64,000 nt of DNA, taken from NCBI GenBank assembly GCA_052426225.1, contig JBNJNM010000015.1, positions 682,001 through 746,000 on the forward strand, read 5' to 3'. Positions 2,840 through 52,992 of this stretch are shown here, in pieces (the first letter of the stretch is position 1; each line of letters starts with the position of its first letter). Source of the stretch: Zancudomyces culisetae HAW-14-8. Its lineage: Eukaryota > Fungi > Kickxellomycota. Made by a program: the position numbers and the translations under genes. Under the pieces are notes generated by a model. It was not told the origin of the DNA. It was given only the letters and a program-made list of their open reading frames with translations, and did not search any database.

Positions 2840-5800
2840 ATGAGTTGGAAAAAGGACGAAGATGGAGGTAAGAATTTAAAAAGTATATAAAAAGACAAAT
2901 TAAATATATGGATGAATAGTAATTTAAGAGATAGAAAGAGGGGAGGGTATAGCAATAAAGATGTGGTTATAAACAATAGGAGAGTTGGGGGCGTTAATGA
3001 CGGTAGACCAATCAGCGGTATTACAGGAAGCAAGGATTTTTAACGAGACGCCATTGAAACCTAGACAATGTAGATTGTTGTTGGCCAAATTGATGTATAT
3101 ACTGCAAAGGGGAGATGTATTAAGCACTACAGAGGCGACAGAATTGTTTTTCAATATCACAAAGCTGTTCCAAAACAAAGATGTAAGTGGGAGAAATAAA
3201 CAAAGTAAAAGTAAGTACTAAAAAGAGGGGGCAATAATATGTAAAAATAGATGTCGTTGAGGCAGATGGTGTATTTGGCAATTAAGGAACTGTCAGAGAT
3301 ATCAGAAGATGTGATTATGGTAACAAGCTCGTTGATGAAGGATATCCAGCCAAAGTCGGAGGAAATGTACCGAGCCAAGGCGATAAGGGCACTGTGTAAA
3401 ATCACAGACGTGTCGATGCTGCCAGCGATAGAGAGGTTTTTGAAGGGAGCGATAGTGGATAAAAACCAGGTGATATCGTCAGCAGCATTGGTATCGGCGT
3501 ACCATTTACAATGGAAGGCAAGAGAGATAGTAAGACGATGGGGAGGAGAGGTACAGGAGGCGCTTTCACACAGTGGTGGGAGCGGGTCGTTTTTTGGAGG
3601 AAGTAGCGGAGCAGCGACAACAGGGTCAGGAATTGAACAGTACCATGCACTGGGATTGCAATATATGTTGAAACAACAGGACCGGATGGCGGTAGCAAAG
3701 ATGGTACAAGGGCTGAGTGGAATTGGAGGAGGAAGAAGTGGAGGATGGTTTGGAGGAGGAGGAGGAGGAGGAGCAGTGCTGAAAAACGGAATGGCACAGG
3801 TATTGATGGTGCGATATGCAGTTAAAGTGATGGGAGACGATACAGGAATGCAGCAAGGGTTGGAGGATTTGTTGGAGGATAATCTGCGTAGTCGGACAGA
3901 TATGGTGAGTTTGGAGGCGGCACGGGCAATATGCGAGTACGAGGGAGTGTCGAAGAAACGACTGTCGGCAGCAGTAAGCGTTTTGCAGGGCTTTTTGGGA
4001 TCAAACAAGACAGTTCTTCGGTTTGCAGCGATGCGGATACTGGACAGATTGGCGAGTAGACGGGCAGATGCAGCACAGGTGTGCAATGTGGATATTGAGG
4101 GACTGATCAGCGACAGCAGCAGACCAGTAGCAACCTTGGCAATTACAACGTTGTTGAAGACAGGAAACGAGGCGTCAGTGGACCGGTTGATGGGGCAGAT
4201 GCAGAGTTTTATGGCAGAAATCAGCGACGAGTTCCGGACAATAGTGGCAGAAGCAGTCAAGAATCTGAGTGTCAAGTTTCCACAGAAACATGCTGTGTTT
4301 TTGAGTTTCCTTGCTGGAGCGTTGCGTGATGAAGGAAGCCTTGAGTTCAAGCAGCGTATTGTTGACTCGATTATTGGGCTTGCACGACAGGTTGGTGAGT
4401 GTCGCGAAACAGCGTTGGCTCATTTGTGTGAGTTTATTGAAGACTGTGAGTTCAGCAAGCTGTCAGTTCAAGTGCTGCATTTCCTAGGCCAGGAAGGCCC
4501 AGCCACATCACAGCCAACCATATACATTCGTCATATCTACAACCGTGTTATTTTGGAAGATGCAGTTGTACGAGCTGCGGCAGTATCGTCGTTGGCTAAG
4601 TTTGGAGCAGCTCCTCAGGCCGAGGGCAAGCTGCGTACATCTATCCAAACACTCCTCAAACGCTGCTTGGATGACCGTGATGACGAAGTACGTGACAGAG
4701 CTGTGTGGGCTCTCAGCTTGATGCGTGATGAACGCAAACGTGTCAGGTACATTCGTGACGACTCAACATTTGCACTGGATCAGTTGGAAGCTAATTTGGC
4801 TGCTCATGCCTTTGATCCTGCCTATGCATCCAAGCGTATCGATTTGAGCGCAATCCCTCGCGTATCACGTGATGCTGAACTCGCTGCCAGAACACATATT
4901 GGCCTTTTGTCTTCTCCTTCAATCCCCATGTCACGTGAACAGAGTCTACAACTAGCTGACAGTCGAACTTCAACCCCTATGATCTCAACTACAACAACAG
5001 CAGGAGCGACAACAACAACAGCAGCAGTAGGAGCAGGAGCAGGGGCAGTATATTCAGCAGAGGCGAAAGAAAAGGCAGAACAAACCGCCCAAATGTTTAG
5101 TGAGTTTGGTCCTGTGCTTTCCTCTTCTACTTCTCCAACTGCCTTGACTGAATCCGAAACTGAATACACTGTTGCTTGCTACAAACATGTCTTTGCTCGC
5201 CACATTGTTTTCCAATTTGATTGTGTCAACACTCTCAACGAATGCATTTTGGAGCACGTTTATGTCGACATGACTACCGACGATGATATTGATTCTGTTC
5301 TTCGCCCACTCAATGCTGTTCCTATCGATTCTTTATCTTACAACTCTCCCAAATCCACCTATGTCGCCTTTGAGCTGCTTCTTCCCGATTCTCTGCTTGA
5401 CGGTTCCTGCCCTATTGCTTCTTTTGACTGTTTGTTGAAGTTTAAAGTTGTAGACTGCGATCCTTCTACTCTTGAAAAGCTTGATCCCGAAGATCCTGGC
5501 TTTGACGATGAGTATTTGCTTGAGTCTGTTGATTTGGCTGAAGCTGACTATTGCTGCCCTGACTACTTTTCTGACTGGAACGCCCTGTTCGATTCCTATC
5601 CCGAATCTCTCCAGTCCTTTGCTTTGCCTCACTTACACACCATCAATGCTTGTGTTCAGAACCTGATTGACCTGTTGGGTTTGTATTCTCTTGATCTTGC
5701 TTCCAACTCTCTTCCACTACCTGATTCTCTAAAGGCTCACCAGTCTTACTTTATGGGCTCTTTTATGCGTGGTTCAAAGGTTATAGTTAGGGCTAGAATG

Positions 5801-5899
5801 ACTCTTGATCCTCAATCTACCAATGGTGTTACTTTGGAATTGTCTGTTAGATCTGAGGATCCTTTACTATCCCAATTTATTATTGGTTCCATTGCTTAA
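2840..5899 (+). CDS. SEC21: Coatomer subunit gamma; exons 2840-2867, 2980-3182, 3251-5899
   Basis: Spliced N-terminus MSWKKDEDGGELGALMTVDQSAVLQEARIFNETP. Introns GTAAGA..TAG and GTAAGT..TAG keep the frame. Motifs LRQMVYLAIKEL, LCEFIEDCEF, YIRHIYNRVILE and LTESETEYTV are gamma-COP hallmarks. Confidence 0.96.
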
Positions 5900-6239
5900 A
5901 TCTTTTCTTTTTCTTTTTCTTTTTCTTTTATTCCTTTTATTTCTTTTTATTATTACTATTATTATTATTTACACTTTTATTCAAAAAAAAAAATATTTTT
6001 CATTTGTCAACCAAGTAAAAAAAATTAAAAAAAAGTACTCTAGTCGTGTTTTTTTATTTATTTATTTATTTATTTATTTAAATTCAACATAAACAAAAAT
6101 ATTGATAATTCTAAATCGGCTCTCCTCCAAACAACTACAACTACAACTACAACTACAGCTAAAGCTACAGCTACAGCACAAAAGGCTAGTTAAGAAAAAT
6201 CCACTTTTTTAATATAGATAATACGCGGACTTGGATAAA

Positions 6240-9200
6240 ATGGATAAAAAACAGGCGAATAACAATCATCTTGACAAACTAGTGCTCCAGTATTTGAAAA
6301 ACAAGGGATATAAAGAAGCCGAACGTGCGTTGCTAGAAGAATCCCATTTAACAACCTTGGGAATCGATCCCTATAATTCTTCTTCGACTTTAATTCCATC
6401 CCAAGATACCAATCCAGAATTACTTGGAAATACCAATACTAAAGAGAATGAAAATGAGAACGTGAATGCGAATGAGAATGCGAATGAAAACGCGAATGAG
6501 AATGATACTGGTACTGGTACTGGTACTGATATTGATATTGATATACAAACTGCATTGACAAATGAACTTGTAGAACTTTCGACCGAAGGTGTAATTTCAG
6601 ATAATCGACTTTTACTTTTAAGTTCATCGGTTTCCAACACAAAAACAACAACAGCAACAACAACAGCAACAACAACAACAACAAATAAAACAACAGCAAC
6701 AACAGCAACATCAACAAGGGAGGATAATGAAGAATCTGATGAGCAGGATATTGACAATTCTTCATTTTCGACACCAATATCAAGCTCCACGCCAATTATT
6801 GATGAAGCAAATGTGATTGCTTCGTTTGACAAGTTTTTCAATTGGGTAATCAACAGTCTTGAAGAATATAAACATCAATTGTTGGCTGTCTCTTTTGCAT
6901 TGTTTGTATATATCTATATCTTGTTGTCAAGACAAAAGAATCTTGTAAAAATAAAAGGTAAAGGAAAAGGAAAAGGAAAGGTAGAAAGGGAGCTACAACA
7001 AGAAAAGACAAGACAATTTTTGGAAAAATATATTGTATTTTATTCCAATTTGAATAATTACTATGCCCAAGAACTTGCTAGTTTATCTTCGATTTATAAC
7101 AATCAGGCATTTGAAAAATATCTTGGAAATACAAGTACCAAAGGTGGTATTGGTGGTATTGGTGATGGTGTTAGTAATAGATACATGTTGAAACTTAGTG
7201 GTAGTTGTATTCAATTGTTACTAAACTACTTTACCATGGATAATACCAGTAATGTCACTATTACCAATCATAATCATAATCATAACCAAAATTTGAATCA
7301 GAATCAGAATCAGAATCAGGGCGCTCTTGGTTTTACCAAAAAAAGTGAAGCTAGTGGTGGTATAGGAATTGTAGAAAATCTACAGGGACCTCCAATTTTA
7401 TTGGTTTTGTTAAATATGTACATTACTTTATTAAAAAGCACTGTATTTGAAGAAATTGGAATTGTTAATAGCGAAATATTCTTGCCATATTCATCTAAAA
7501 CTCAAACTACAACTACATCTACAACAAAAGATTATGAAAAAGAAAAAGATTTTGATAAAGAAAATACTAATGCTAGTGATAATACAAATGCTAGTGTTGT
7601 TGAGAATCAGTTAACTAATTTGAATTCTAAAAACTTACAATTAAAAATCTCGTATCAATATACAATCGATAATACTAATCTACCTGTAGTACCTCCTACT
7701 AGTACTACTGATGAAAAGCCTGATAGTTCTAGTGCAAGTACAACGAATACAAATACTGCTACAACTGCTACAACTACAACTACAACTACAACTACAACTA
7801 CTGATACTGCTACAACCACAACTACTACTACAGGAATGGGAACTGGGGTACCACCACCACCACCACCATCATCATCATCATCCTTGGCTACTGAAACATC
7901 TAATTCTGTTAGTACTTTTAGTACTGGTGAATTTGTGTTACCGATAACCGATACCACACAGCTTGATAGTATTTCAGACCAACAAATTCTTACTCCCGGC
8001 AGCAAACTCTCAATGGTTAGTAAAGTTCCATTGCCTCCACAAAAGCCTTCGGATAAACTTCGTATTTTGCACGACCTCAAGGATTTATACTCCAGTAAAC
8101 GTGCTATCCACGTTAGCAGTACAAATCCTCCTAGTATTTGTATGTTTACTTTACACAACACCATTTGCAGTACCAGTAATCCCAGTCCAAATTCCAATTT
8201 TAATACTATTGGTGGTGGTGGTGGTGGTAGTAGTGGTAGTGGTAATAGTGAAAGTACTTTAACATCTACTGCTATTTCTCGCGATTTCGATATTGTAGCT
8301 GCTGGATTTTCCGATTCTTATATTAAAATTTGGAATATTAACAACAACAACAACAACAACAATAGAGATAGAGATAGAGATATAGATAATGAAAATCAAC
8401 AAAATACCGATTCCAATCTTGATACTGATAACGAGTATCAAAAATATAAAAATAAAAAACTAGTTGCTCATAGTGGGCCTGTATATGGACTAGATATTGC
8501 TCATGATAATTCACTACTTGTATCCAGTAGTGCAGATACAACTGTACGATTATGGTCACTTTTCCCAAACTCTTCTTCCTCTTATTCCTCCTCCTCAACA
8601 ACAACAACAACAGCAACAACAACAACAACGTTTAAATCTAAATCTAAATCTAAATCTAAACCTTTAGATTTATGTGCAAATTTGGCAAGTTATCGAGGCC
8701 ACAATTATCCAGTATGGGATGTCAAATTCAGTCCATTTTCATACTACTTTGCTACTGCAAGCTATGACCGTACTGCTCGGCTGTACAGTGTAGAGCGAAT
8801 CAATCCTCTACGTCTTTTTGCTGGCCATTTGTCCGATGTAACGACGGTAGCCTTCCATCCAAATTGTAATTATTTGGCTACTGGTTCTGACGATACTTAT
8901 GTTCGACTCTGGGATATTTCGAGTGCAAGTTGTGTTCGTTTATTGTATCCACAACAATCCTCTTCCTCTTCCTCTTCTTCTTCCTCTTCTACTGCCAATA
9001 GTACTAATAGTGCCAGTGTTGGTAATAATAGAGGTCCTGTAACTTGTTGTAAATTCTCTCCAAATGGTAAATTATTAGCTGTTGCTTATTCTGCCGTTTC
9101 AATAACACCTGTTACAAATAAACCAAAATCAAAGTCTAAAACTCAAACTCACACCAAAACCAACCCTAATGATCAACAACAACAGCAACAAGAACAACAG

Positions 9201-9641
9201 CAACAACAGTCAACATCTCCTTCAAAATCAACAACAAAATCAACAACAAGAACCACGTTTCGTAACACAAACAATGCAATCATTGTATACGACCTATCAA
9301 CATCCAAACCACTCTTTACTTTTGCGTATGCCCACAATGCGCTTATTACTTCTTTGGATTTCAATAATGAGTCCACTGTTCTGCTATCTAGTTCCATAGA
9401 TAATACAATTAGAGCCTGGGATCTTGTACTGAACAACTCGCATAATTCCAACTCTAAAATTGGTGCTAGTAATGGTATTAATACTTCAACCACTGGTGGT
9501 GGTAGTGGTATACCTTCTTCTCCTTCTTCTTATAATCATTCTAGTCCCTTGTTTACTTGGTATACTAGAAACACTCCTGTTTATCACCTCAAGTTTTCCA
9601 CAAAGAATTTGTGTGCTGCTGTTGGTCCCTTCATACCTTAA
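6240..9641 (+). CDS. TAF5: TFIID/SAGA subunit TAF5 (LisH, NTD2, WD40) with large low-complexity insertions
   Basis: LisH-like LVLQYLKNKGYKEAE, PSICMFT, AGFSDSYIKIW, LVAHSGPVYG, YRGHNYPVWDVKFSP, LRLFAGHLSDVTTVAFHPNCNYLATGS. First in-frame ATG is at 6240. Confidence 0.92.
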   Translation: MDKKQANNNHLDKLVLQYLKNKGYKEAERALLEESHLTTLGIDPYNSSSTLIPSQDTNPELLGNTNTKENENENVNANENANENANENDTGTGTGTDIDIDIQTALTNELVELSTEGVISDNRLLLLSSSVSNTKTTTATTTATTTTTNKTTATTATSTREDNEESDEQDIDNSSFSTPISSSTPIIDEANVIASFDKFFNWVINSLEEYKHQLLAVSFALFVYIYILLSRQKNLVKIKGKGKGKGKVERELQQEKTRQFLEKYIVFYSNLNNYYAQELASLSSIYNNQAFEKYLGNTSTKGGIGGIGDGVSNRYMLKLSGSCIQLLLNYFTMDNTSNVTITNHNHNHNQNLNQNQNQNQGALGFTKKSEASGGIGIVENLQGPPILLVLLNMYITLLKSTVFEEIGIVNSEIFLPYSSKTQTTTTSTTKDYEKEKDFDKENTNASDNTNASVVENQLTNLNSKNLQLKISYQYTIDNTNLPVVPPTSTTDEKPDSSSASTTNTNTATTATTTTTTTTTTTDTATTTTTTTGMGTGVPPPPPPSSSSSLATETSNSVSTFSTGEFVLPITDTTQLDSISDQQILTPGSKLSMVSKVPLPPQKPSDKLRILHDLKDLYSSKRAIHVSSTNPPSICMFTLHNTICSTSNPSPNSNFNTIGGGGGGSSGSGNSESTLTSTAISRDFDIVAAGFSDSYIKIWNINNNNNNNNRDRDRDIDNENQQNTDSNLDTDNEYQKYKNKKLVAHSGPVYGLDIAHDNSLLVSSSADTTVRLWSLFPNSSSSYSSSSTTTTTATTTTTFKSKSKSKSKPLDLCANLASYRGHNYPVWDVKFSPFSYYFATASYDRTARLYSVERINPLRLFAGHLSDVTTVAFHPNCNYLATGSDDTYVRLWDISSASCVRLLYPQQSSSSSSSSSSSTANSTNSASVGNNRGPVTCCKFSPNGKLLAVAYSAVSITPVTNKPKSKSKTQTHTKTNPNDQQQQQQEQQQQQSTSPSKSTTKSTTRTTFRNTNNAIIVYDLSTSKPLFTFAYAHNALITSLDFNNESTVLLSSSIDNTIRAWDLVLNNSHNSNSKIGASNGINTSTTGGGSGIPSSPSSYNHSSPLFTWYTRNTPVYHLKFSTKNLCAAVGPFIP

Positions 9642-9929
9642 TAATAATTTATTATTATCCTTAAATTTTCATATTTATCTATCTATCTATATATATATCT
9701 ATATATTTGTTTGTTTTTGTACTTTTTTAGTAAATGATGTTTTTTTTTTTTGAACATGCTCTTTATTTTCTCTTTTTTCAAGTAAAATTATAATATATTA
9801 AATTGAATGGAATAAAATAAAATAAAAGGTAATATATAAATATACCTACCATCAACTAGTATTATAAAACAAGAAGAAAAAAATAGAAAAACGAATAGGG
9901 TAGTAATAATACTATAGATATATATATAT

Positions 9930-16145: not shown

Positions 16146-16163
16146 GGGGGGGGGGGGGGGGGG
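16146..16163 (+). repeat. poly-G tract (18 G)
   Basis: Directly visible; follows a (GT)n run. Confidence 0.9.
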
Positions 16164-22774: not shown

Positions 22775-23457
22775 AAAAACATTAGTTTAGGGGCAAAATC
22801 ATACACTATTTCATAGCCTTTTTTCATTTTTAAAATAAATACTGAATAAAACATAAGAAAATAAAACATGATACATAAAACAAAACAAAAGCCTCACGTT
22901 GTTTGGAGGGGGAGGGGAAGAGAGAGAATAATTAGGAATTGATATAACATATTTCAATGAAAAGCATCGTGTATAAGTTGAACGTTTTTATGGAGATGTC
23001 AAGGTAAAGTGTAATGATTGATAAGTATTTGAAATATATACAACTCAATCCTAGTAACAAAGTATTTTACACGAATTAGTGAATAAAAACGTATACCAGG
23101 TATTGTATAAAATGAATACTGTTCAGTTTTCAAACTTGGGATGATTTGATGAATAAATAATTGAGATATCTTATTAACAATGATGTAATTGTCCAGTAAA
23201 ATAATCACTAAAAAAAAAAAGAAAAACAATAAAGAAATGAAAGATTAAGTTTAGATACTTTTTATTTTATTTTATTTTATTTAATTTAATTTAATTTAAT
23301 TTGAATTAAGCTTTTTTGTTTTTATTTTACTTGTTTGATTGATTGAGATCTAGTAAAGATGATTGTGGAAAATAAATGATGTGTAAATGTCAGAGGAGAA
23401 AAAAAAAAGACAATGGTAAAGTCTAAGGCAAAGTCTAAGGAAATGGAAAAAAGTAAA

Positions 23458-23510
23458 GAAAAAGAAAAAGAAAAAGAAAAAGAAAAAGAAAAAGAAAAAG
23501 AAAAAGAAAA
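23458..23510 (+). repeat. (GAAAAA)n hexanucleotide microsatellite
   Basis: About 8 tandem units. Confidence 0.9.
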
Positions 23511-24362
23511 GAGGGAAAGGGAGAGTAAGAGATATGAGTAAAGGGGAGTTATTATATATTTTAATAGTAAAATCAGAAAGACAAAGAATGAATGTAGAGA
23601 GTGCGTGTGAGTGAGAGAGAGGAAAAAAAAAACGGTTTGTTTGTTCATTACCAAAAATGAAATCTAACTAGTCAAAAAAAAAGAAAGAAAAAGAAAGCTT
23701 AGATTTCACTTGTTATTTGCCAAAAACAAAAAACAAACAATCACATGTATAATACGAAAAGTCTTGGTCAAAAAAAAAAAGAGAGAAAAAAAAAGAGAAA
23801 AAAAACGAGTATTTAAAAACCAAAACAATGTTTCTTTGTGATTATCAAAATTGGTTGGGCAAAACTAGAAACTACAAGCTAAACTTTGCAAAGTTTTAGT
23901 AGAGTTTTCGTTTATTTATCTGTTTATTTATTTTGTTTTTTTAGTTTTAATTTTTCCACTGTACACGGAATACCTTTTTTTAAATAATAAGAAAATTTTA
24001 ATTGTGGAAAATAGAATTAAATAAAAAAAAATATTACCCATCAGTAAAATAAAATAAAATAAAAAATATTATTATGGAATATACAAGCAAAAACAAACTA
24101 GTCTTTTCTTTGAAAAAAATTAAAAGTTTAATGATTAAAATTGCAGAGTTCAAACTCAAACAAAAGAATAAGCAAAAAAAAAATAATACAATAATTAGTG
24201 ATAGAGCAATGAACATTATAATTTTTAATCAGACACTCACATGAATACTACCACTACTACTACTAATAATACTAGAACCAAATAACTGATAAAAAAAAAT
24301 AAAAAAAAGAAGCAGAAAGAACAGGATTGAATTGAACAGAATAGAAAAAGTAAAAGAAAATA

Positions 24363-31219: not shown

Positions 31220-31220
31220 T

Positions 31221-43100: not shown

Positions 43101-44214
43101 GCTTTTATTTCCAATAATACTGATTATTGTAATAGGTCTGATACGTAATTCCCATTTTAAGGTAATTCGACACCAAAATTGTAATTATTTTATTCCCACC
43201 CTCCATATCTCCGTTTAGCTAAACTTGGATACTTTTTATTATATTTATTGGTACTAAAATAATGTAAAATAACATTAAAAATCCAATCAGTTGAAAGTGT
43301 ACAAATCACACCATATTTCACCGTATCATGTTTAGTGTACAAAAAAAGGCTGTAAAACAGTAATTTGAAGATTATATATTTACTTTTTTTTTTGTCTGTT
43401 TTGCTATTGTTTTCATTTTATTCTTGAATTATTTTATTACATTATCGATAGTTGTGCAACGATTAACTTCCTTTTTTGAACAATATCTAAAAATAATTAA
43501 AAGCTGGATTTTGTTAATCCACAAACTCGTATAAAAAATCTGAATGAAAAAGAGTTCAACTAGCCAAACACTTCAAAGATGCAGTATTGTTTCAGAAAAC
43601 GCACGCTGTTTAGTTTACCCTGCTCAAGTACAAAAACGACGAACAGCGATTAAATATCTTATTCGTTTGTATAAAAGCAGAATGACGTTTCCGAGTTTTT
43701 GTTTTAAAGTAAAGGTCGAAAGTTTGCGCCTATAAATTTGTACAATTGTTGTCATCCACAAAGTCCACCCGACGTTTTGATACATGACAGACACCCTGAA
43801 CCCTAAACTTTGAATGTGGGCTTGAAAACAATGGATCCATAAGTGTCAAGTGTTTCTATTTGTTCTAGAATAATCCATTACACACACCTTCCCCCTCTCT
43901 TCCCCCCAGGTTCAAGCCCAATAAAATGGAGGTTGTCGAATCAACAAAGTGTTTGCATATTTCTCTGCTTAAATGGAGATTTTACCATTCATACGCTGTT
44001 TTTTACATTGCTTCTTGCCAAACTTTTAAAGTAAATGGTAGAAAAAAAAAAGAAAACTAATGGGGGGAAAAATACGTAGCTGAAAAATTAAAAAGCGGAG
44101 AACAAACTAGATTGTTTTTTTTTTTTTTTACAAACGAGATTGTTCTTTTTTGTTCTTCTCCATAAAACTTTTTTTTATTCCACAAAAAGTGAGCGGGCAT
44201 AAAGTTATGGGTTA

Positions 44215-45463
44215 CCAATGAAAATCGCACAATGTATCACGTTCAATATTTAGGAAGTGATTTTCAAGCAATTCTTTTTTTTGGAGAATCTATTGAAAAA
44301 AATGCTGAGACAAATTTTATGCTGATTGGTAATCAGAGCGCAACAACAGGTTAATAATTTCGATTAGATTGACCAATGGTACATAAAAAAAAGTATGGGA
44401 AAATAAATTTCAAACCTTCTGCTGATTATTAGATGCAAATGGCTTAATTTTGCAAGAGGGGGTATCATAATCAGTAATCAATCCGATGGGATATTCGTGA
44501 TTGTAAAAATAAAATTGATCAATAAGAGATTAATGAAAAAGTAGTTGCATTTTGTAAATTATGTCACACTTGAAAAGCAAATGGGGCAAAAAATAGGAAA
44601 ATAAAACGAGGTAGAAATATACGGGTTGGGTAGTTATTAATTTTGTGGTGAAAAAGTCAAAAAAAAATCGAATTACATAAACTTAAACAAAAGTAAAATA
44701 ATACAAAATCATGTGCTTACAACGAGATGGGTTATTTTCATTTGAAAAATGATGGAAAGGGAGGGGAAAAGGCGAGAGAGACTTGTAAAGTTAAGTTTTT
44801 GGGTCAAAAAACTTGTAAGCGTGATTGGGAGGAGTGCTCTTGGCCGAATGCTGTACTTAGAATAGATACCTATTGAAATAAGACAAGCTTATTCTTTTTT
44901 TTATTAAACAAAAAGCTCAACCAATCGGTCGAATGAGAGGCGGCAACAAAATCTAATGATTAATAATACGCTTTCTAGGATTTAATAGGTAGTTAATTAG
45001 TTTTATAGCTTTCACGTTCCTAAATTAAAGAAAAAATTTCGTAAACATAAAATCCTCACTTCAGTTGACTAAAGCGCCGAAGGGTCTAAAAATTAGTAAG
45101 AAATGTCAGGAAATAAAAAGGTGCAAATTAACATCAGAGATAAAATCTATTGAATTTTCAATAGATTAAAAAAACATTCGGTTTTTTTTTGCAGCATTTC
45201 AAATTCAAAAAGAACCAATGAAAAGTAACACGATATGATGTTATGGATTGTTTTACATTGGTTAGTTCACTATATGGTTTTTCCGTGTTTTTATTTTTCT
45301 AAGCAAACTAGAAGCGATTATTGTTATTAAAAGATAAGTAAAATTTCTTGGTTAATCCTCTAAATAAAATAAAAAAGAACTAAAGACCACAAAAAATTTT
45401 ACATTGGACATTTCTCGATTGTTTCAATATTAAATATTATGCTTTGTACAAAATAAAAATTGG
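44215..45463. promoter_or_regulatory. Cluster of CCAAT boxes upstream of the iron-responsive GATA gene
   Basis: CCAAT/ATTGG at 44215, 44325, 44373, 44824, 44921, 45215, 45257, 45403 and 45459. Confidence 0.45.
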
Positions 45464-45976
45464 AATACCCCACCATTTAAATATCTTTAGTGGTAGTGAA
45501 ACTTTGAGCAGGAAGAAATAGAAAGCCGAGACACATACTGGCAGCAAAAGAAATACCAGTATTCGTTAGACAGTACGGCATATTAATTTACCGGACGTAC
45601 AATAAACAGAGAAAATCAGTTTATATATACTGGAACAAATTTTTTCAAGAGTCTTGAAAGGCAATATACTCTTGTCAATAAGCACAGTAACCGTGTGTCT
45701 AGAAAAGGGGTAGTAATTAGTAGTGAATAAAGACAATAATAGAGGAAATAGTTTATAGAAATAGTGCAAGGATATTTGCAAAAAAAAAAAGTTGGAGCAG
45801 ACAAGTAACAGTATATAAAAAAAAAGGAGGAGGAAAAAGACAAATACAAATACAAGAATTGAAAAAACAACAACAACAACAACAAAGGTCATACTAAAAT
45901 AGTTGTGCATGATAACTTGTAAGTTTATGACAAGGAAAACAGAAAACCTTGCTAAAGTAAATTAAAAAATCGAAAC

Positions 45977-48532
45977 ATGTACAATACAAGAGTAGAAAGT
46001 ATGGATAGAGTGGATAAAGTAGATATGATAAATAGGATGAACGCAATAAATACAATGGATAGAGTGGATAGGATTGATAGAGTTGATAGAATGGATAGAA
46101 TGGATAGGCTTGAAAGGCTTGATAGGATGGAGGGAATAGATAGGATGAATAGGATTGATAGGATTGATAGGCTGAACAGAATGGAGAGAGTTAATATGAT
46201 AGAGGGAGGAGAGAGGAGAGAGGAGAGATTCAGCAATGGAGTGGATAACCTACCACCAATGCATAGGGTTGCAGATAAAGCGAAACAAGAGTTGGGTAGA
46301 TTAGAAGGGAATAGGTGGATGGAACGATCGCCCGCAAAAGATCTGAGAGGAGGAGCAGGGATAGGAGCAGGGATAGGAGCAGGAGGAGGAGGAGGGGAAG
46401 AAGGCAGAAGAGATGAGGAATCAGAGAAGAGAGCAGTTAGACTTCCATCAATAAACTTTTTGACAAACATGGTACAAGATGAAGAAGAGGACAAAAGCAA
46501 AACATATTATGACAAGTATCAAGAGCAACGGCGGCAACCAGGTTTTGGAAAAGAATATTATTATGAAGATCAAAGGCGAGGATATGAAATAAGAGCAGAA
46601 AGAGAAACCCCTAGATACAATGGATTGGAAGGAATGAGACTGGAAAACAGATATGGAATGAACAGAGAAGATAGACAAGTGGGATACAGAGAACCAGCAA
46701 AGATGGGAGGCAGTTGGTTATACAATAAAGGGGAAGAGTTTGGTTCAAGAGATGGAGTAAGAGGATTGAATACAATGACATCGACGGGTACGACTACAGG
46801 TACAGCTACAGGAAAGACAACAGGAGGAATAGCTACAACTGCGACAACAGCAGCAAGAACAACAGGTTCAGTAACATCAACAAATACAACGACAGCAGGA
46901 ATAGCGGCATTGGCAGTGAGAAGAAATATAGGTGTAGAAAACGGTAATAAGAGTGAAGAAGAAGGAATAAAAAAGGGAGAGCGACGCAAACGCAGCGCAG
47001 ATGCACTTGACCAGGCACGGATGGCAAGCCGAGGAGCAAAAGGAAAAAAGGGATCAGTCGGACCAACTTTTTGTGTAAACTGCAAAACCACAAGCACGCC
47101 GTTGTGGAGAAGAGACGGGCAAGGTAAGCAGGTGTGTAATGCATGTGGATTATATCTCAAATCGTACGGACGTATGCGCCCAGTCCAGCCAGCTAGTCTG
47201 GAAGCCAATCTCTCAATTTTAAACAAAGCAATCAATTCGCATATGGGCGATGTCCAGCTTTCCGACCGGCCAATTGCATCTATTGTCCCGCTAATCAACC
47301 GGTTGCCTGTAATGCAAAAAGATTCTGCACTTGATTCAGCATCTAAACCTTCAATCAAGCTAATGTCTCCACAGCGTCCCATCGACCATAACAGTAACAA
47401 TAACCATAATCACAACCATAATCACAACAATAACAATAACAATAACAATAATCACAACAGTAACCACAATCACAATCACAACTCGCCTCATTCTGCTAAA
47501 AAATCATGCAGTGATTCTGCAGATAAATGCCCTGGAAATGGCAGCTGTAACGGTAAAGGTGGCGAGCCAAGCTGCAACGGCTGCCCTACTTTTAACCAGA
47601 CTCAAATCCGTAACGGCACCAGCGTTGTTGACCGTCGCTCCCGTACCAAAAAGACCAAGCTTGATGAATTCTCTGTCGACGCCCTTAACGGAATCCAGCC
47701 TGTCTGCCACAACTGCAGCGCCGTCTGTACGCCTCTGTGGCGCAGAGACGACAATGGCCGCCCTATCTGCAACGCCTGTGGTCTGTACTACAAGCTGCAC
47801 AAGCAGAACCGCCCTCCAAGCATGAAGAAAAACATCATCAAACGCAGAGCTCGTGGAATCTTCCCCGGCACAAGCACCTCTCCATCAAATCCTCCCTCTC
47901 TCATGCCTCACCCTTCCTTCTCGCCTCCTTCATCTTCTGCTGCCAACCCTTCTTCTCTTTCTGCCAAAATGTCTTCCAACATCCACGAAATCGAAGACTA
48001 CGGCTCTCTTGTTCGCCGTAACTCTGCTCTTTTTGACGACAACCATTCTTCCCAGTCTCCAATAAGCGTCACTCTTGATAATGACATTGCTGTTGACTAT
48101 GAATCCGAGGATGATCCCAAACCCTCTTCTCGCAGTGCTCTGGTTTCTCTAGACTCTCTCGCTCTTGCCGCTGAAATCCAAGTTGGTTCCAAACCCTCTT
48201 CTTCTGCTAACCACCCCCCTCGCAATACCTCTCCAACTCTTGCCCCCCTTAAAAAAAACTCTCCTATGCAGTTCAAATCTGCCACTCCTAATTCTCGCCC
48301 TGCAAACTTAAACTCTCCTTCTATTCTCAATTCTGATCCCTCCAACTCAAACTCTAATTCTGCAAACAAGAGCCGCTCCTTAAATGTCGACCTGACTGAA
48401 ATTGATCAGGTTGTCCGGATTCCTGAAGAAGCCCAGCGTTATCGAGAAGAGCTTTTGCTCAAAGTCGGAAAACTCCAAGATATGCTGACCAAATCCACAA
48501 TGATTCTGGACTATCTTGATAAAATTTCATAA
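45977..48532 (+). CDS. Iron-responsive GATA repressor, SreA/Fep1/Urbs1 family
   Basis: Two GATA fingers (CVNCKTTSTPLWRR..CNACGLY; CHNCSAVCTPLWRR..CNACGLY) separated by the Cys-rich motif CPGNGSCNGKGGEPSCNGCP, plus a C-terminal coiled coil. Confidence 0.93.
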   Translation: MYNTRVESMDRVDKVDMINRMNAINTMDRVDRIDRVDRMDRMDRLERLDRMEGIDRMNRIDRIDRLNRMERVNMIEGGERREERFSNGVDNLPPMHRVADKAKQELGRLEGNRWMERSPAKDLRGGAGIGAGIGAGGGGGEEGRRDEESEKRAVRLPSINFLTNMVQDEEEDKSKTYYDKYQEQRRQPGFGKEYYYEDQRRGYEIRAERETPRYNGLEGMRLENRYGMNREDRQVGYREPAKMGGSWLYNKGEEFGSRDGVRGLNTMTSTGTTTGTATGKTTGGIATTATTAARTTGSVTSTNTTTAGIAALAVRRNIGVENGNKSEEEGIKKGERRKRSADALDQARMASRGAKGKKGSVGPTFCVNCKTTSTPLWRRDGQGKQVCNACGLYLKSYGRMRPVQPASLEANLSILNKAINSHMGDVQLSDRPIASIVPLINRLPVMQKDSALDSASKPSIKLMSPQRPIDHNSNNNHNHNHNHNNNNNNNNNHNSNHNHNHNSPHSAKKSCSDSADKCPGNGSCNGKGGEPSCNGCPTFNQTQIRNGTSVVDRRSRTKKTKLDEFSVDALNGIQPVCHNCSAVCTPLWRRDDNGRPICNACGLYYKLHKQNRPPSMKKNIIKRRARGIFPGTSTSPSNPPSLMPHPSFSPPSSSAANPSSLSAKMSSNIHEIEDYGSLVRRNSALFDDNHSSQSPISVTLDNDIAVDYESEDDPKPSSRSALVSLDSLALAAEIQVGSKPSSSANHPPRNTSPTLAPLKKNSPMQFKSATPNSRPANLNSPSILNSDPSNSNSNSANKSRSLNVDLTEIDQVVRIPEEAQRYREELLLKVGKLQDMLTKSTMILDYLDKIS

Positions 48533-48774: not shown

Positions 48775-51700
48775 ATGGATCTTGTAGAAAAGCTTTTTCA
48801 AAATAAAGATATTGTTGACCTGGTTTCTACGCATAATGTAAGTTGCATACTACGTCCCATTTAGTCAATTTCTCTCTCCGCCTCAACTTTTGTTTTTTTT
48901 TGACTTTAAAAGAAAACGTAAATAACATTTATATATTATAATAATAATAATGTATTGTAGGTAAGTGGCGAAACTCAGGACCAAATTGCGAGCCAAATCA
49001 CACAAGAACTTCATAATTCCATCTTGGAGCCAACCCTCCATCCTTCGTCCAATTCCGATCAGCTACTAAAATCTCTACAACGAAACATCCCTGTAGGAAT
49101 CACATTAAATGAACTGTACAACACCAGTCAACCCCGCTTCAATGCCAATTTTACTCGGCTAGATTTTGCCAGAAATGTAACTACAAACAAAGTTGTTCAA
49201 GTCACTGGAACTCGGGTAAAAGACCGGCTCGGTATTGAGGGAGAACATGAAGGCATAGGCGGAAAGAAAGTAGAGGGTGGAGTCCAGGAAATGTATAGTG
49301 GCCAGGATGTCTACGCCAGAGGAAAACTGTTGGGAAAACCGTTTTTGCCAGGCAGTAGTGATAGTAGAACAGGAGAAGCTCATACACAAACGAAGCTTAA
49401 TATTGATTGGGAAGCTTTATGGGAGGATATTTCACAGGAAAGTAAGTATTTCAGCAAGATTCCGGGTCTTGTTGATTCAGCTACAGATTCCGAAAACAAA
49501 TTCAAGAGTAATAGTAAGAGCAAGAGCGAGGAGTTAAAAGAGCCTGCAAATTCTGGCTTGAAACGAATAGAGACAAAAAGCAAAATACAGGTGGATATTG
49601 AAAAGTACTCGGAAGTAAATACACGAGTGGAAACTCCATCACCAACAACCCAATTGCAGCCTGTTAATAACGAAAAAGACGCTACTAATCAAAGACTGGG
49701 TACCCGGCAGGAGGATTCAGTCGTTGATCAAATTATAGAAACAACCAAGGTAGACGAAAAACAGATTGAACAAAATGGTAAAGATAAAAATAACAAAAAG
49801 TGGGCGGTAATAGTTCCACCAGAAGAAAGCGGCAAAAACTACGACGATCTCTTGAATCCAGCAATAAAGTATCCGTTTGAGCTAGACGGATTTCAGAAAG
49901 AAGCTATATGTCGTTTAGAACATAGCGAAAACGTGTTTGTGGCAGCCCACACTTCAGCTGGCAAGACAGTAGTCGCTGAATACGCGATTGCACTATCAAT
50001 GGCGCACATGACCAAAACGATATATACTTCACCTATAAAAGCACTGTCAAATCAAAAATTCCGTGAGTTTTGCGATAAGTTTGGAGCGGACAACGTTGGA
50101 ATCATTACGGGAGATGTGGTGGTACGACCAGAAGCAAGTGCGGTGATAATGACAACCGAGATTTTGCGGATGATGCTGTACAGAGGCGCAGATATGCTGA
50201 GGGATGTTGAATTTGTAGTGCTTGACGAGGTTCATTATGTTAATGATACAGACCGTGGTGTGGTGTGGGAAGAAGTGATTATCATGCTACCCAAACACGT
50301 TACTTTGGTTTTGCTTAGTGCAACTGTATCCAACACACTGGAGTTTAGTGAATGGGTTGGTCGGACCCGAAAGAGTGAAGTGTATGTAGTCAGCACACCA
50401 AAGCGACCGGTACCACTAGAACATTATTTGTATATCCCCACAATTACTACTACGACTGTTACAAATGGTAGCCGACAACGGTTAGCAGCTGAAGATTCAC
50501 TTGAAAAACATGGAATCTACAAAATTGTCAACGAACACGGCGAATTCAACACAGATACCTACAAAACTGCCGTACGAGACCAGTCGTTATCAGCAAAACA
50601 AGCTGAATCGGGCCAGCCAAAACAAAAACGGCCAGAACTTAAAACCAAATCCAAGGCAGGCAGCAACAGCAGTTTTGGTACCAATCGGATGGTCCAGAAA
50701 GCATCACAGGCTGCATTTGGCATGCTTTCACCTTCATTCTATTCATCGTTCACTCCATTGTATTCTCATTCGGCTAGTCACAACGTAGGTAGTAGCTATG
50801 CTGAGTTGACCCAGCTGGTCAATACACTGAAACTCAAGGGCTTGACTCCAGCCGTTATGTTTGTGTTTTCGCGTAAACGTTGCCAGGAATACGCAGAGGC
50901 GCTAACCAACACCTCGTTCCTGACCTCCAAACAAAGTGCGTATGTCCACCGCTTTATTGCCACCAGTTTGTCGTCGCTAAACAAGAGCGACCGCGAACTA
51001 CCGCAGATTATTAACATGACGTCGCTCCTCAAGCGCGGAATCGGTACTCACCACAGCGGCCTGTTGCCAATTCTCAAGGAAATTGTCGAGATCTTGTTTA
51101 GTCGCAACCTGATTGGTATTCTGTTTGCCACCGAAACATTCGCAATGGGTGTAAATATGCCCGCAAAGGCTGTAATCTTCAGCGGTTTGCAAAAGCACGA
51201 TGGTACCAGTTTCCGTGATTTGCTGAGTAGTGAATATACTCAAATGAGTGGTCGTGCTGGTCGCCGTGGGCTTGACCGCACAGGCACTGTCATTCTGGCT
51301 CCTGTTATTTCCAGAAAGAATTTGGCCAAGCCCGATTCAGCCTTTTTATACAATCTGATTTTGGGTAAGGCTGGCAAGTTGATTTCACAGTTCAAGCTTT
51401 CATATTCAATGATTCTAAACCTATTTCGTGCAAACAAAATCCGTGTTGAAGATATGATCAAAAAAAGCTTTTGTGAACATGACAGTGCCTCCCACCACCC
51501 ACAAATTCTCGAGTTGATTAAACAACATACCGCCCAACTTGCCTTGCTGGATTCTCCTGAAAACAAACTCGACTGCCAGTACTGTTCTGATTCCATCGAA
51601 AGCCTTTACAAACTCTGTCTAGACCTTGCTAATTCCCACTTTTACCTCTACTCCTTGCAGCCCCGTAGTCTGCTTGCCAAAGATAGATTTGTCGTTGTTT

Positions 51701-52992
51701 ATCTCCACAACTATGGAAACTGTCTTGCCACTGTTTCTCACCACCCTCCTTCTCTTTTCTCTCCCGAAAACCATAATTCCCGCATCAAGTTGTCTCTCTT
51801 TTTACCTGCCCATTACGCTATCCCCACTGATTTGCTTAACTCTGAGCTAGCTTCTGACTACTCCTTTGAATTTCCAACTTCTGATGTCTTGCCTCCAATC
51901 TTTAACTACAATCTTGATTCTCTTTGCCTCTCCTTCTCAAACATGCGTCCCCAATCTGCTCTAATTCCTCTTGCCTTAATCACTTGTATATGTGACCAAT
52001 TCTACGATGGAAACGATCCCTCTTTCCTCACCCAATCCGATCTTTCTATAAAGCGTTCCATGAACGTTACTCTAGAATACGCCCTCCTATTAAAAAGCAG
52101 AAACTCTACCCTTGACTCTCTCCTCTCTCTCACCAAATCCTCGCCCATCCTTTCCTGCCCCAACTTCAACTCCCACTTTGCTCTTGTCAACCATAAATCC
52201 GCCTTATTGTACCAACTTACCAATCTACAATTCTCTATTTCTTCTCTAAACCTTGCTCTAGTTCCCGAATACAACGTCAGAGTTCGTGTTCTTAAACACC
52301 TAAACTTTCTCACTCCCTCAAACACCCTTACTACAAAAGGTCTCAGCTGCTGCGTTATTTCTTCCACCTCCGACTCCCTCCTCCTCACCGAGTTCATGTT
52401 TGGTTTTGATGCCCTCTCGTCCTTTTCTCCCCAGGAAATTGTTGCCATTCTCAGTGGATTCGCTCTTCAACAATCCTCTAGTTCAACTTCTCTACCTTCC
52501 TCTCCCTATGAATGCTCCTTTGATTCCAACCTGGTTTCTGTCGGTTCATCTTCTGTCTCCAATATTAACTCGGCTCTTTCTTGTATTTTTGATCTTGCTG
52601 TTAAAATTCAACATGCCCAGTCACTCTACACTCTTTCCTCCTCCACATCATCTACCTCCTCTGTTTCGTCTGATCCAAACTCAAATACCAACCAGCAATC
52701 TCTACCTGTATGCTCCTACAACCCATTACTCATTCCTGCCACTTACCTGTGGGCTGATGCCCTGCCATTCAAGGACATTTGCCACTACTACTCCTCCATG
52801 ACATCTTCTCCTTCCTCTACTATTGTCGACGAAGGTCTAATTATCCGAACTGTCCTCAGAATTAATGACCTTCTTGAAAACCTCAACAACTTTATTCTTA
52901 TCACTGGCATGTCTCAATACGCCCCCATTCTTGCTCAGTGCAAACAATTAATTACTCGTGATATTGCCTTTGCTTCTTCACTATACTACTAA
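48775..52992 (+). CDS. SKI2: Ski2 DExH RNA helicase; exons 48775-48837, 48961-52992
   Basis: YPFELDGFQKEAI, AAHTSAGKTVVAEYA, DEVHY, LFATETFAMGVNMPA, QMSGRAGRRG, terminal RDIAFASSLY. Intron GTAAGT(48838)..TAG(48960) is phase 0. Confidence 0.94.

What the first reader, a model, noticed from the sequence alone, without database searches (positions are those of the whole stretch)
3251..52992. Recurrent mid-gene strand-skew flip: purine-rich 5' halves, pyrimidine-rich 3' halves
Seen: in gamma-COP, the Rho GEF, the GATA factor and SKI2, the + strand changes from G/A-rich to C/T-rich around mid-gene (~4.5, ~26.5, ~47.3, ~50.8 kb). Hand counts in illustrative, hand-picked 60-nt windows: 3901-3960 G25/C8 vs 5581-5640 G7/C24; 25681-25740 G24/C10 vs 27241-27300 G3/C31; 50161-50220 G21/C6 vs 52081-52140 G4/C24. 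It affects synonymous sites in conserved domains and the inserted homopolymers (poly-Gly/Glu/Arg at 5', poly-Ser/Pro at 3'). One purine-rich domain spans calreticulin plus the GEF 5' half, so it looks positional rather than strictly per gene. Inference: simple transcribed-strand bias would not change sign inside a gene. Kilobase-scale skew domains suggest fixed, closely spaced replication origins with forks meeting mid-gene, or another polar mutation/repair process strong enough to reshape the proteome.
Basis: partly seen in the sequence, partly recalled or inferred. Interest (0 to 1): 0.8.

Follow-up and report, generated by a model that had tools for sequence, protein, structure and literature searches.

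The report
Purine-to-pyrimidine codon flip inside genes
In this insect-gut fungus many genes are written almost only with purine-ending codons in their first part and pyrimidine-ending codons in their last part, a very strong and apparently undescribed strand bias that follows the direction of each gene and has visibly altered the proteins.

Summary
His six 60-nt counts are exact. At fourfold-degenerate sites the purine share falls from 0.93-0.96 to 0.08-0.15 in gamma-COP, 0.93 to 0.06 in the Rho GEF, 0.83 to 0.08 in the GATA factor and 0.63 to 0.12 in SKI2 (p 1e-18 to 1e-62).

It holds inside conserved domains and in two 5' introns, and it shifts amino-acid use. The two arms are reverse-complement mirror images.

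The genome is Zancudomyces culisetae, by an exact contig-length match to the published HiFi assembly. The bias is widespread: of 41 ORFs of at least 400 aa from 8 contigs, 36 decline 5' to 3', 18 at p<0.001, and none rises significantly, on both strands. Other first-stage readers of this scan noted the same flips on other pieces of this genome.

Seven related fungi lack the decline in the orthologous gene. One Coemansia has a weak version.

Polarity follows gene direction and the skew is bounded by the transcription unit. I therefore read it as a gene-anchored strand-asymmetric mutation pressure, probably transcription-linked. Forks meeting mid-gene are kinetically implausible at 4-6 kb. The mechanism is not settled. 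No paper describing this was found.

The parts
1001..2839 (+). Purine-rich non-coding flank upstream of gamma-COP (purine fraction 0.55-0.71), with (GAAAA)n tracts
   Evidence: A .43, C .10, G .18, T .29. No ORF of 150 aa or more.
2840..5899 (+). Gamma-COP gene. Exon 1 is 2840-2866 and intron 1 is 2867-2981. Exon 2 is about 2982-3183 and intron 2 about 3184-3250. The long exon runs to 5899. Purine arm to about 4150, switch zone about 4150-5000, pyrimidine arm about 5000-5899 plus about 300 nt of 3' flank.
   Evidence: Pfam hits to Adaptin_N and the COP-gamma appendage domains. Exons placed by tblastn with the Furculomyces orthologue. Fourfold purine share 0.93-0.96 falling to 0.08-0.15. Introns have purine fraction 0.73 and 0.78, with 3 C in 115 nt and 3 C in 67 nt.
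6231..9641 (+). TAF5-like WD40 gene with a weak version of the same decline
   Evidence: Fourfold purine share 0.63 before and 0.36 after the change-point, p 1e-4. It lies next to gamma-COP, as in Furculomyces.
20924..22774 (+). Calreticulin. It is purine-rich throughout with no pyrimidine arm. The extreme purine stretch at 21800-22700 is its expanded Lys/Glu tail, which ends in KDEL.
22775..24362 (+). Purine-rich intergenic stretch between calreticulin and the GEF
   Evidence: A .47, C .09, G .15, T .28. Holds (GA)n-like tracts.
24363..28445 (+). Rom2-like Rho GEF (RhoGEF, PH, CNH). Purine arm 24363 to about 25860, switch about 25860-26910, pyrimidine arm about 26910-28445.
   Evidence: Pfam. 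Fourfold purine share 0.93 falling to 0.06, p 4e-62, change-point at 0.54 of the ORF. RhoGEF domain 0.84 against CNH 0.07. Sequence read directly.
44001..45976 (+). Purine-rich flank upstream of the GATA factor
   Evidence: Purine fraction 0.54-0.71. A .41, C .12, G .18, T .29.
45977..48532 (+). GATA zinc-finger factor. Purine arm to about 46876, switch about 46877-47575, pyrimidine arm to 48532.
   Evidence: 0.83 falling to 0.08, p 6e-30
49024..52992 (+). SKI2-like helicase. Weak purine arm 49024 to about 50500, switch about 50500-51500, strong pyrimidine arm about 51500-52992.
   Evidence: 0.63 falling to 0.12, p 3e-18

Best explanation
A lineage-specific, genome-wide, strand-asymmetric substitution pressure is anchored to transcription units in Zancudomyces culisetae.

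From about 300 nt before the ATG through the 5' part of a gene, the sense strand loses C and T and gains G and A. In the 3' part, up to 100-400 nt past the stop, the same change happens on the antisense strand. The sense strand therefore switches from purine-rich to pyrimidine-rich over a 1-1.5 kb zone, usually at 40-70% of the ORF.

The pressure acts on all transcribed DNA. It is strongest at fourfold sites and also present in introns and UTRs. It is strong enough to change amino acids and to seed composition-matched low-complexity inserts.

Shown here: the pattern, its mirror symmetry, its gene-anchored polarity on both strands, its bounds, its lack of neighbour-base dependence, its effect on proteins, and its absence from most relatives.

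Inferred, not shown: that the cause is mutational rather than selective. Also inferred is that the polarity comes from transcription. In that reading the RNA-like strand gains purines, with sense transcription dominating the 5' part and antisense transcription, or another 3'-anchored polar step, dominating the 3' part.
For: 1. The effect is maximal at fourfold sites, up to 0.93-0.99 purine. It is weaker at codon positions 1 and 2. It is present in two introns, with purine fraction 0.73 and 0.78 and almost no C.

2. The arms are mirror images at fourfold sites. The purine arm is A .52, C .03, G .36, T .09. The pyrimidine arm is A .10, C .37, G .04, T .49. The baseline is A .38, C .13, G .13, T .36.

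3. A transition asymmetry flips with the arms. At twofold sites G/(A+G) is 0.53 in the purine arm, against C/(C+T) 0.29. In the pyrimidine arm C/(C+T) is 0.53, against G/(A+G) 0.41.

4. Polarity is gene-anchored. Of 41 ORFs, 36 decline 5' to 3', 18 at p<0.001, and none rises significantly. Minus-strand genes behave the same way: L023 0.99 to 0.39, L030 0.82 to 0.19, L032 0.80 to 0.19.

5. Genes wholly within one arm always have the purine-rich strand as coding strand.

6. The skew rises at about -300 from the ATG and returns to 0.5 within 100-400 nt of the stop. Long intergenic stretches are neutral.

7. At otherwise conserved gamma-COP positions, replacements go to purine-richer codons in the 5' arm (22 up, 9 down). 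They go to pyrimidine-richer codons in the 3' arm (6 up, 14 down).

8. The pattern is derived. The orthologous gamma-COP of Furculomyces, three Smittium species, Martensiomyces, Coemansia spiralis and Lichtheimia shows no such decline.
Against: - No RNA data could be laid on the locus; no sequencing run was listed. Antisense transcription over the 3' arms is therefore untested.
- Upstream of isolated promoters the sense strand is neutral or purine-rich, not pyrimidine-rich. If promoters fired divergent transcripts with the same mutagenic effect, it should be pyrimidine-rich.
- In three window genes the purine-rich zone reaches 1.5-2 kb upstream of the ATG, further than a usual 5' UTR.
- Known transcription-linked asymmetries are of the G+T type and far weaker (from memory: Green 2003, Touchon 2003, Polak and Arndt 2008).
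- Mirror symmetry of A:G and T:C would also arise under selection for purine or pyrimidine content on top of a strand-symmetric AT/GC bias.
- The affected genes (a GEF, a GATA factor, SKI2, INO80, kinases) are not obviously highly expressed.
Confidence: 0.45

Rival explanations
1. Replication. Efficient origins sit in the AT-rich gene-flanking regions, forks run into genes from both ends and meet in a narrow zone, and a replicative-strand error bias (pyrimidine to purine on one nascent strand) builds the skew.
For: - The profile is saw-toothed, with sharp rises in intergenic DNA and gradual falls inside genes or at convergent gene junctions.
- The two arms have equal and opposite amplitude. 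That is natural if each base is copied by either a rightward or a leftward fork.
- In the unequal convergent pairs (SKI2 with its neighbour; the 2064-aa INO80-like gene with a 953-aa gene) the switch lies inside the longer gene, near the midpoint between the two 5' ends.
- Only one MutL-type domain was found in the genome, in MLH1. If PMS1 is truly lost, replicative asymmetries would go uncorrected.
Against: - Polarity never disagrees with gene direction.
- The skew stops within 100-400 nt of stop codons, and multi-kb intergenic stretches are neutral.
- Adjacent arms that would share one putative origin differ greatly in amplitude. Gamma-COP's 3' arm is at 0.08-0.15 while TAF5's 5' arm next to it is at 0.49-0.74. 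The GATA 3' arm is at 0.08-0.21 while the SKI2 5' arm next to it is at 0.49-0.63.
- Kinetic inference from general knowledge, not tested here: with forks at 1-3 kb/min, origins 4-6 kb apart would have to fire within well under a minute of each other in nearly every cycle. Otherwise they could not give plateaus near +/-0.9 with a 1-1.5 kb switch.
- Known replication skews are G+T against A+C and small.
Confidence: 0.15
2. Selection on the RNA. Purine-rich, C-poor nascent RNA in the first 1-2 kb protects against premature termination or cryptic polyadenylation in an AT-rich genome. Pyrimidine-rich RNA near the 3' end favours termination before the next gene.
For: - Introns and UTRs share the skew, so the target could be the transcript.
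- Purine bias that prevents premature termination has just been shown in bacteria (PMC13323073, found).
- Genes with a close tandem downstream neighbour have the most pyrimidine-rich 3' thirds: fourfold purine share 0.25 against about 0.46, p 0.0009.
- Mirror-image A:G and T:C ratios would follow from a strand-symmetric AT/GC bias within the allowed base class.
Against: - Driving thousands of synonymous sites to 0.93-0.99 needs strong per-site selection. This is an obligate gut symbiont that lacks about 20% of BUSCO genes (PMC12611240).
- Conserved residues are replaced, and long Gly/Gln or Ser/Pro runs are inserted. That looks like a cost rather than a target.
- The same tandem-neighbour genes also have stronger 5' arms, so the association is not specific to 3' ends.
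- A pyrimidine-rich stretch of 1.5-2.4 kb inside the ORF would invite truncation.
- Purine and pyrimidine arms of one mRNA can pair with each other: cofold -231 against -154 kcal/mol for baseline pieces. That is hard to see as favoured.
- Close relatives with equally AT-rich genomes lack the pattern.
Confidence: 0.15
3. Recombination. A double-strand-break hotspot lies at the switch zone, and resection exposes the 3'-ending strand on each side. Damage or biased repair of that single strand, plus GC-biased conversion, gives mirrored arms around a GC peak.
For: - GC3 peaks near the switch in the GEF, GATA and SKI2 genes (0.59-0.67 against 0.28-0.43 at the ends).
- The strand that ends 3' at the centre is the purine-rich one on both sides. 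That is the geometry of strand-coordinated mutation clusters around breaks described in yeast (from memory: Roberts et al. 2012).
Against: - The arms end at gene ends rather than fading with distance from the centre.
- Some switches lie at convergent gene junctions, and some genes have only one arm.
- Fourfold GC correlates only weakly with skew amplitude (rho 0.19).
- Hotspots centred in coding exons of a large share of genes would be unusual.
Confidence: 0.1

Closest known systems
Transcription-associated strand asymmetry (mammalian genes; 5'-end-specific asymmetry of Polak and Arndt 2008; GC skew near transcription start sites in plants and fungi, Fujimori 2005). All recalled from memory.
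   Same: Polarity follows gene direction. The effect covers introns and UTRs and is bounded by the transcription unit. There is an A-to-G excess on the RNA-like strand.
   Different: Here the axis is purine against pyrimidine, not G+T against A+C. The amplitude nears saturation at fourfold sites (0.9-0.99). The sign reverses inside the gene.
Replication skew domains (bacterial GC skew; human N-domains; GC-skew flips at Candida centromere origins). Recalled from memory.
   Same: Saw-tooth profile with sharp rises and gradual falls. The two arms are mirror images.
   Different: The period is one gene (3-8 kb). Polarity is locked to gene direction. Long intergenic DNA is neutral. The base axis is different and the amplitude far larger.
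Purine loading of coding strands (Szybalski's rule; bacterial purine bias that prevents premature termination, PMC13323073)
   Same: The 5' parts and many whole genes have purine-rich coding strands, transcribed non-coding parts included.
   Different: Purine loading has one sign along a gene. Here the 3' parts of many genes are as strongly pyrimidine-loaded. At baseline genes in this genome fourfold sites are not purine-loaded at all (0.51-0.53).
Directional mutation pressure that reshapes proteomes (GC-content-driven amino-acid shifts, Sueoka; strand-biased animal mitochondrial genomes). Recalled from memory.
   Same: Synonymous sites are most affected and replacement sites less so. Amino-acid use and low-complexity runs track local base composition.
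   Different: The pressure changes sign within single nuclear genes over about 1 kb.

Membership tests
Replication-associated skew domain | Skew sign depends on position relative to origins and termini, not on gene orientation | tested here: not met
   All 18 significant gradients run purine to pyrimidine in the coding direction, on both strands, and none runs the other way. Genes wholly inside one arm always have the purine-rich strand as coding strand.
Replication-associated skew domain | Skew continues through intergenic DNA up to the origin | tested here: not met
   Purine fraction returns to about 0.5 within 100-400 nt after stop codons. Multi-kb intergenic stretches are neutral. Three window genes do have 1.5-2 kb purine-rich upstream flanks.
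Replication-associated skew domain | Measured fork direction switches at the skew flips | not testable with these tools
   No replication data. No sequencing run was listed.
Transcription-associated strand asymmetry | Polarity follows the direction of transcription | tested here: met
   (gene direction used as a proxy for transcription)
Transcription-associated strand asymmetry | Present in introns and UTRs, and bounded by the transcription unit | tested here: met
   Gamma-COP introns have purine fraction 0.73 and 0.78. Onset is about -300 from the ATG. The first 100 nt after the stop have purine fraction 0.30, then the value returns to 0.5.
Transcription-associated strand asymmetry | One sign along the whole transcription unit | tested here: not met
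   The sign reverses inside the ORF. An added assumption is needed, such as antisense transcription or a 3'-anchored step.
Transcription-associated strand asymmetry | Amplitude scales with transcription level | not testable with these tools
   No expression data were reachable. A transcriptome exists (PMC12611240).
Purine loading by selection on RNA | Coding strand purine-rich along the whole mRNA | tested here: not met
   3' parts reach a fourfold purine share of 0.06-0.2.
GC-biased gene conversion hotspot | A local GC3 peak whose height tracks the effect | tested here: inconclusive
   GC3 peaks near the switch in three of the four genes. Fourfold GC against skew amplitude gives rho of only 0.19.

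The most novel reading that the evidence does not exclude
Zancudomyces culisetae carries a previously undescribed polar mutational process tied to gene ends. It converts pyrimidines to purines on one strand in the 5' part of a transcription unit and on the other strand in the 3' part. It has driven synonymous sites of a large share of genes to 90-99% purine or pyrimidine. It has also remodelled protein sequences and inserted low-complexity runs, and may explain part of the species' low BUSCO score.
Probability: 0.5. Interest if true: 0.9.

Novelty: new variant of a known kind. Interest (0 to 1): 0.78.

Why it matters
Strand compositional asymmetries are the main sequence-only read-out of replication and transcription polarity. 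In nuclear genomes they are normally small.

Here the asymmetry is near saturation, uses an unusual purine/pyrimidine axis, and changes sign inside genes. Two halves of one mRNA therefore use almost disjoint sets of synonymous codons, and presumably of tRNAs. The encoded proteins drift towards Gly/Glu/Arg at one end and Ser/Pro/Leu at the other.

If the cause is mutational, this organism is a natural, culturable system for studying a very strong polar mutation or repair process. A high-quality assembly and a transcriptome already exist for it.

There are practical consequences too:
- Codon-usage, dN/dS, phylogenomic and orthology (BUSCO) analyses of this lineage will be biased by position within the gene.
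- Long spurious antisense ORFs appear inside skewed arms (for example 3157-4350 and 26808-27827 on the minus strand).

Tried and rejected
1. A specific 5'-3' RNA panhandle. Cofolding 400 nt of the GEF purine arm with 400 nt of its pyrimidine arm gives -230.6 kcal/mol, against -204.6 +/- 9.1 for shuffled pyrimidine arms. The pairing is mostly composition, with no convincing specific complementarity.

2. UV-type dipyrimidine lesions. The pyrimidine share at fourfold sites in purine arms is 0.17-0.29 in all four flanking contexts, in proportion to baseline. There is no neighbour dependence.

3. CpG or methylation effects. CpG observed/expected is unremarkable.

4. Loss of a repair pathway. UNG, OGG1, the XPC/Rad4 BHD3 domain, XPA and six MutS homologues are present. 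The Rad4 core model gave nothing, but it had no valid control. Only one MutL-type domain was found, in the MLH1 gene. That is an open lead, not a finding.

5. Reading the Pol epsilon and Pol delta exonuclease motifs. The candidate genes were located (C11:1813396-1813962, C13:540481-541137).

6. RNA or DNA reads. No run was listed.

7. Mapping all purine tracts genome-wide by pattern. Only the counts came back: 24,225 forward and 22,700 reverse 35-mers with at least 33 purines.

8. Downstream promoter as the source of the 3' arm. The association with tandem neighbours is significant. The same genes also have stronger 5' arms, and isolated promoters show no mirrored signature upstream.

9. Literature. 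Six full-text searches found no description of this pattern. The genome paper contains neither 'skew' nor 'purine'.

10. The three-exon gamma-COP model was not joined. Only the long exon was searched, by reference.
Full report
**1. The observation**

In 1-kb windows GC skew and AT skew change sign together inside the four named genes. In 400-nt windows the plus-strand purine fraction runs at 0.62-0.74 in the 5' parts and 0.26-0.40 in the 3' parts. It crosses 0.5 at about 4500, 26550, 47300 and 50650.

Pfam confirms the gene names: gamma-COP, a Rom2-like Rho GEF with RhoGEF, PH and CNH domains, a GATA factor, a SKI2-like helicase, calreticulin and a TAF5-like WD40 protein.

**2. Synonymous sites**

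Table 1 gives the fourfold-degenerate purine share in eighths of each ORF, with Spearman p values.

Table 1.

| Gene | Fourfold purine share, eighths 1 to 8 | p |
|---|---|---|
| gamma-COP | 0.93, 0.96, 0.90, 0.54, 0.36, 0.48, 0.08, 0.15 | 2.6e-46 |
| GEF | 0.83, 0.93, 0.90, 0.74, 0.36, 0.06, 0.08, 0.18 | 4.4e-62 |
| GATA | 0.78, 0.80, 0.83, 0.66, 0.46, 0.20, 0.08, 0.21 | 6.1e-30 |
| SKI2 | 0.49, 0.58, 0.63, 0.49, 0.35, 0.12, 0.15, 0.22 | 2.6e-18 |

The flip holds inside conserved domains:
- RhoGEF 0.84 against CNH 0.07
- Adaptin_N first half 0.94 against the appendage platform 0.08
- DEAD 0.62 against DSHCT 0.19

Codon positions 1 and 2 shift in the same direction, less strongly.

**3. The two arms are mirror images**

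Table 2 gives pooled fourfold composition.

Table 2.

| Class | A | C | G | T |
|---|---|---|---|---|
| Baseline genes | .38 | .13 | .13 | .36 |
| Purine arms | .52 | .03 | .36 | .09 |
| Pyrimidine arms | .10 | .37 | .04 | .49 |

The pyrimidine arm is the reverse complement of the purine arm.

A transition asymmetry flips with the arms. At twofold sites G/(A+G) rises to 0.53 in purine arms, while C/(C+T) stays at 0.29. In pyrimidine arms C/(C+T) rises to 0.53, while G/(A+G) stays at 0.41.

The effect does not depend on whether the neighbouring bases are purines or pyrimidines.

**4. Not confined to codons**

Gamma-COP has two small 5' introns. I located them with the Furculomyces orthologue and read them directly. 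Both lie in the purine arm and are purine-rich. Their purine fractions are 0.73 and 0.78, with 3 C in 115 nt and 3 C in 67 nt.

I averaged over 15 skewed genes:
- The sense-strand purine fraction rises at about -300 from the ATG.
- It is 0.30 in the first 100 nt after the stop.
- It is back near 0.5 by +400.

In the three strongest window genes a weaker purine excess (0.60-0.62) reaches 1.5-2 kb upstream.

**5. Proteins are reshaped**

Purine arms are enriched in Gly, Glu and Arg. Pyrimidine arms are enriched in Ser, Pro and Leu.

In an alignment of gamma-COP with 50 homologues I looked at positions that are otherwise conserved:
- In the first 300 residues, replacements go to purine-richer codons 22 times and to pyrimidine-richer codons 9 times.
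- After residue 650 the counts are 6 and 14.
- The N-minus-C purine-codon score is 7.7 SD from the homologues.

Low-complexity runs follow the local composition. The 5' parts carry QGQVQG repeats and poly-Gly. The 3' parts carry Ser/Pro runs.

**6. Which genome, and how widespread**

The window is C15:682001-746000 of a 27.09-Mb, 25-contig assembly. Its contig C11 is 5,239,357 bp long. That is exactly the largest contig of the PacBio-HiFi assembly of Zancudomyces culisetae (27.18 Mb, 26 contigs, GC 35.56%; PMC12611240). The best gamma-COP hits are Harpellales at 53-58% identity.

Only 200 kb more of the genome could be fetched. I added 16 distinct SNF2-family genes from 7 contigs. Together with the window that gave 41 ORFs of at least 400 aa:
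- 36 decline 5' to 3' in fourfold purine share.
- 18 decline at p<0.001.
- None rises significantly (sign test p 8e-7).
- 15 of the 21 ORFs of at least 800 aa are significant, and 9 are strong.

Minus-strand genes behave the same way in their own direction. Examples are L023 0.99 to 0.39, L030 0.82 to 0.19 and L032 0.80 to 0.19.

The genome holds 24,225 forward and 22,700 reverse 35-mers with at least 33 purines. By my calculation about 0.5 per strand would be expected for unbiased sequence.

Other first-stage readers of this scan noted the same flips elsewhere in this genome, in YCF1, RPB1, RPA135, TUP1, BRE1 and a chitin synthase.

**7. Relatives**

Table 3 gives the fourfold purine share of the orthologous gamma-COP, in sixths.

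Table 3.

| Species | Fourfold purine share, sixths 1 to 6 |
|---|---|
| Furculomyces boomerangus | .38 .27 .31 .26 .52 .52 |
| Smittium simulii | .27 .15 .27 .25 .32 .44 |
| Smittium culicis | (.83, 6 sites only) .20 .16 .26 .47 .40 |
| Smittium megazygosporum | .35 .33 .26 .24 .34 .41 |
| Martensiomyces pterosporus | flat (.45-.56) |
| Coemansia spiralis | flat (.38-.53) |
| Lichtheimia corymbifera | no decline (.24-.40) |

The syntenic gamma-COP-TAF5 and GATA loci of Furculomyces and S. simulii show no flip in sliding windows either.

One exception is Coemansia sp. RSA 376. Its gamma-COP has a GC peak and a weaker decline.76 .72 .64 .44 .42 .43 (p 4e-11). Four neighbouring genes are flat.

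The extreme form therefore arose on the Zancudomyces lineage. A mild form may recur elsewhere in the subphylum.

**8. What it is not**

I found no convincing specific RNA panhandle, no dipyrimidine (UV-type) signature and no CpG effect. Section 11 gives the full list.

**9. Mechanism**

The geometry is this: in each arm, the strand that runs 5' to 3' towards the switch zone is purine-rich. Three processes share that geometry. They are converging forks, convergent sense and antisense transcription, and bidirectional resection from a central break.

Three observations tie the pattern to transcription units rather than to position:
- Polarity never disagrees with gene direction.
- Whole-gene arms always have the coding strand purine-rich.
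- The skew is bounded by the gene's ends, while long intergenic DNA is neutral.

Against fork convergence I also have a kinetic argument. It is an inference from general knowledge and was not tested here. Forks move at 1-3 kb/min. Two origins 4-6 kb apart would have to fire within well under a minute of each other in nearly every cycle. Otherwise they could not give plateaus near +/-0.9 separated by a 1-1.5 kb switch. If one origin fires first it replicates the whole interval, and the average is flat. In addition, adjacent arms that would share one origin differ greatly in amplitude.

I therefore favour a transcription-linked strand-asymmetric mutation or repair process. In it the RNA-like strand gains purines and antisense transcription dominates the 3' part. 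My confidence is only about 0.45. Three things hold it down:
- Antisense transcription is untested.
- Isolated promoters show no mirrored upstream signature.
- Mirror symmetry alone does not exclude selection on RNA composition.

Genes with a close tandem downstream neighbour have the most pyrimidine-rich 3' thirds (0.25 against about 0.46, p 0.0009). They also have stronger 5' arms. That points to a gene-level or regional 'dose' rather than to a neighbour effect.

**10. Repair genes**

UNG, OGG1, an XPC/Rad4 BHD3 domain, XPA and six MutS homologues are present. Only one MutL-type DNA_mis_repair domain was found. It lies in the same 954-aa ORF as the Mlh1_C domain. PMS1 was therefore not detected. 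This is a lead, not a finding.

**11. What led nowhere**

No public sequencing run was listed for the locus. No further genome letters could be fetched. The Pol epsilon and Pol delta exonuclease motifs therefore stayed unread. Six full-text literature searches found no description of this pattern. The genome paper contains neither 'skew' nor 'purine'.

Only the long exon was searched, by reference. 

**12. Verdict**

- His replication reading and his 'positional, not per gene' claim are not supported.
- The pattern is a new, extreme variant of strand compositional asymmetry, and its cause is unresolved but testable.

Noticed in passing
G000 contig C24 (places listed; DNA partly held as L038-L041): A 701-aa ORF with a family-B DNA polymerase exonuclease domain recurs at a spacing of exactly 26,032 bp in two sets: 1922 and 27954 on the plus strand, and 62978, 89010 and 115042 on the minus strand. 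A 592-aa SNF2-like ORF recurs at the same spacing, also in direct and inverted copies. This looks like a concatenated or palindromic assembly of a 26-kb element that carries its own polymerase. It could be plasmid-, Polinton- or virus-like. I observed it only.
   Followed up: no
G000:C21:596466-598319: The only MutL-type DNA_mis_repair domain found in the genome lies in the same 954-aa ORF as the Mlh1_C domain. No PMS1- or MLH3-type copy was detected by this model. Either a MutL partner has been lost or the search missed it.
   Followed up: partly
window 20924-22774: Calreticulin is 616 aa long, with a roughly 200-residue Lys/Glu-rich repeat tail that ends in KDEL. The tail is encoded by almost pure purine DNA (purine fraction up to 0.93). 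It creates 255-aa and 186-aa spurious ORFs in other frames.
   Followed up: partly
L049:10001-12870 (Coemansia sp. RSA 376): The gamma-COP orthologue has a GC peak (0.60-0.72 against about 0.5 in its neighbours). Its fourfold purine share declines from 0.76 to 0.43, while four neighbouring genes are flat. This may be a mild form of the same phenomenon in a distant relative.
   Followed up: partly
L021, L022, L043, L044 (Furculomyces and three Smittium species): In these Harpellales the gamma-COP fourfold sites are T-rich and very G-poor (G 0.03-0.07, purine share 0.15-0.38 over most of the gene). This is the opposite of the Zancudomyces 5' arm.
   Followed up: partly
window 3157-4350 (-), 25326-26440 (-), 26808-27827 (-), 46570-47400 (-): Long antisense ORFs (up to 397 aa) lie inside the skewed arms. 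They are by-products of the lack of stop-codon letters on strongly purine- or pyrimidine-rich strands, and could mislead gene finders.
   Followed up: partly
G000: C12:1605361-1605855 and C25:33694-34188; C21:2065240-2065851 and C21:2105077-2105688; C6:1690376 and C10:1316803: WD40 hits with identical scores at pairs of places point to recent segmental duplications. One pair on C21 is inverted. The genome paper notes more duplicated BUSCOs in this assembly.
   Followed up: no
window 157-507 (+) and 13128-14279 (+): The C-terminal exon of a bHLH factor lies at the window start. A trypsin-family serine protease gene lies in the unskewed, AT-rich stretch.
   Followed up: no
window 9600-20900, 28600-35000, 38500-44000: These stretches have a purine fraction near 0.5, lower GC and no long ORFs. 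I did not annotate these stretches.
   Followed up: no
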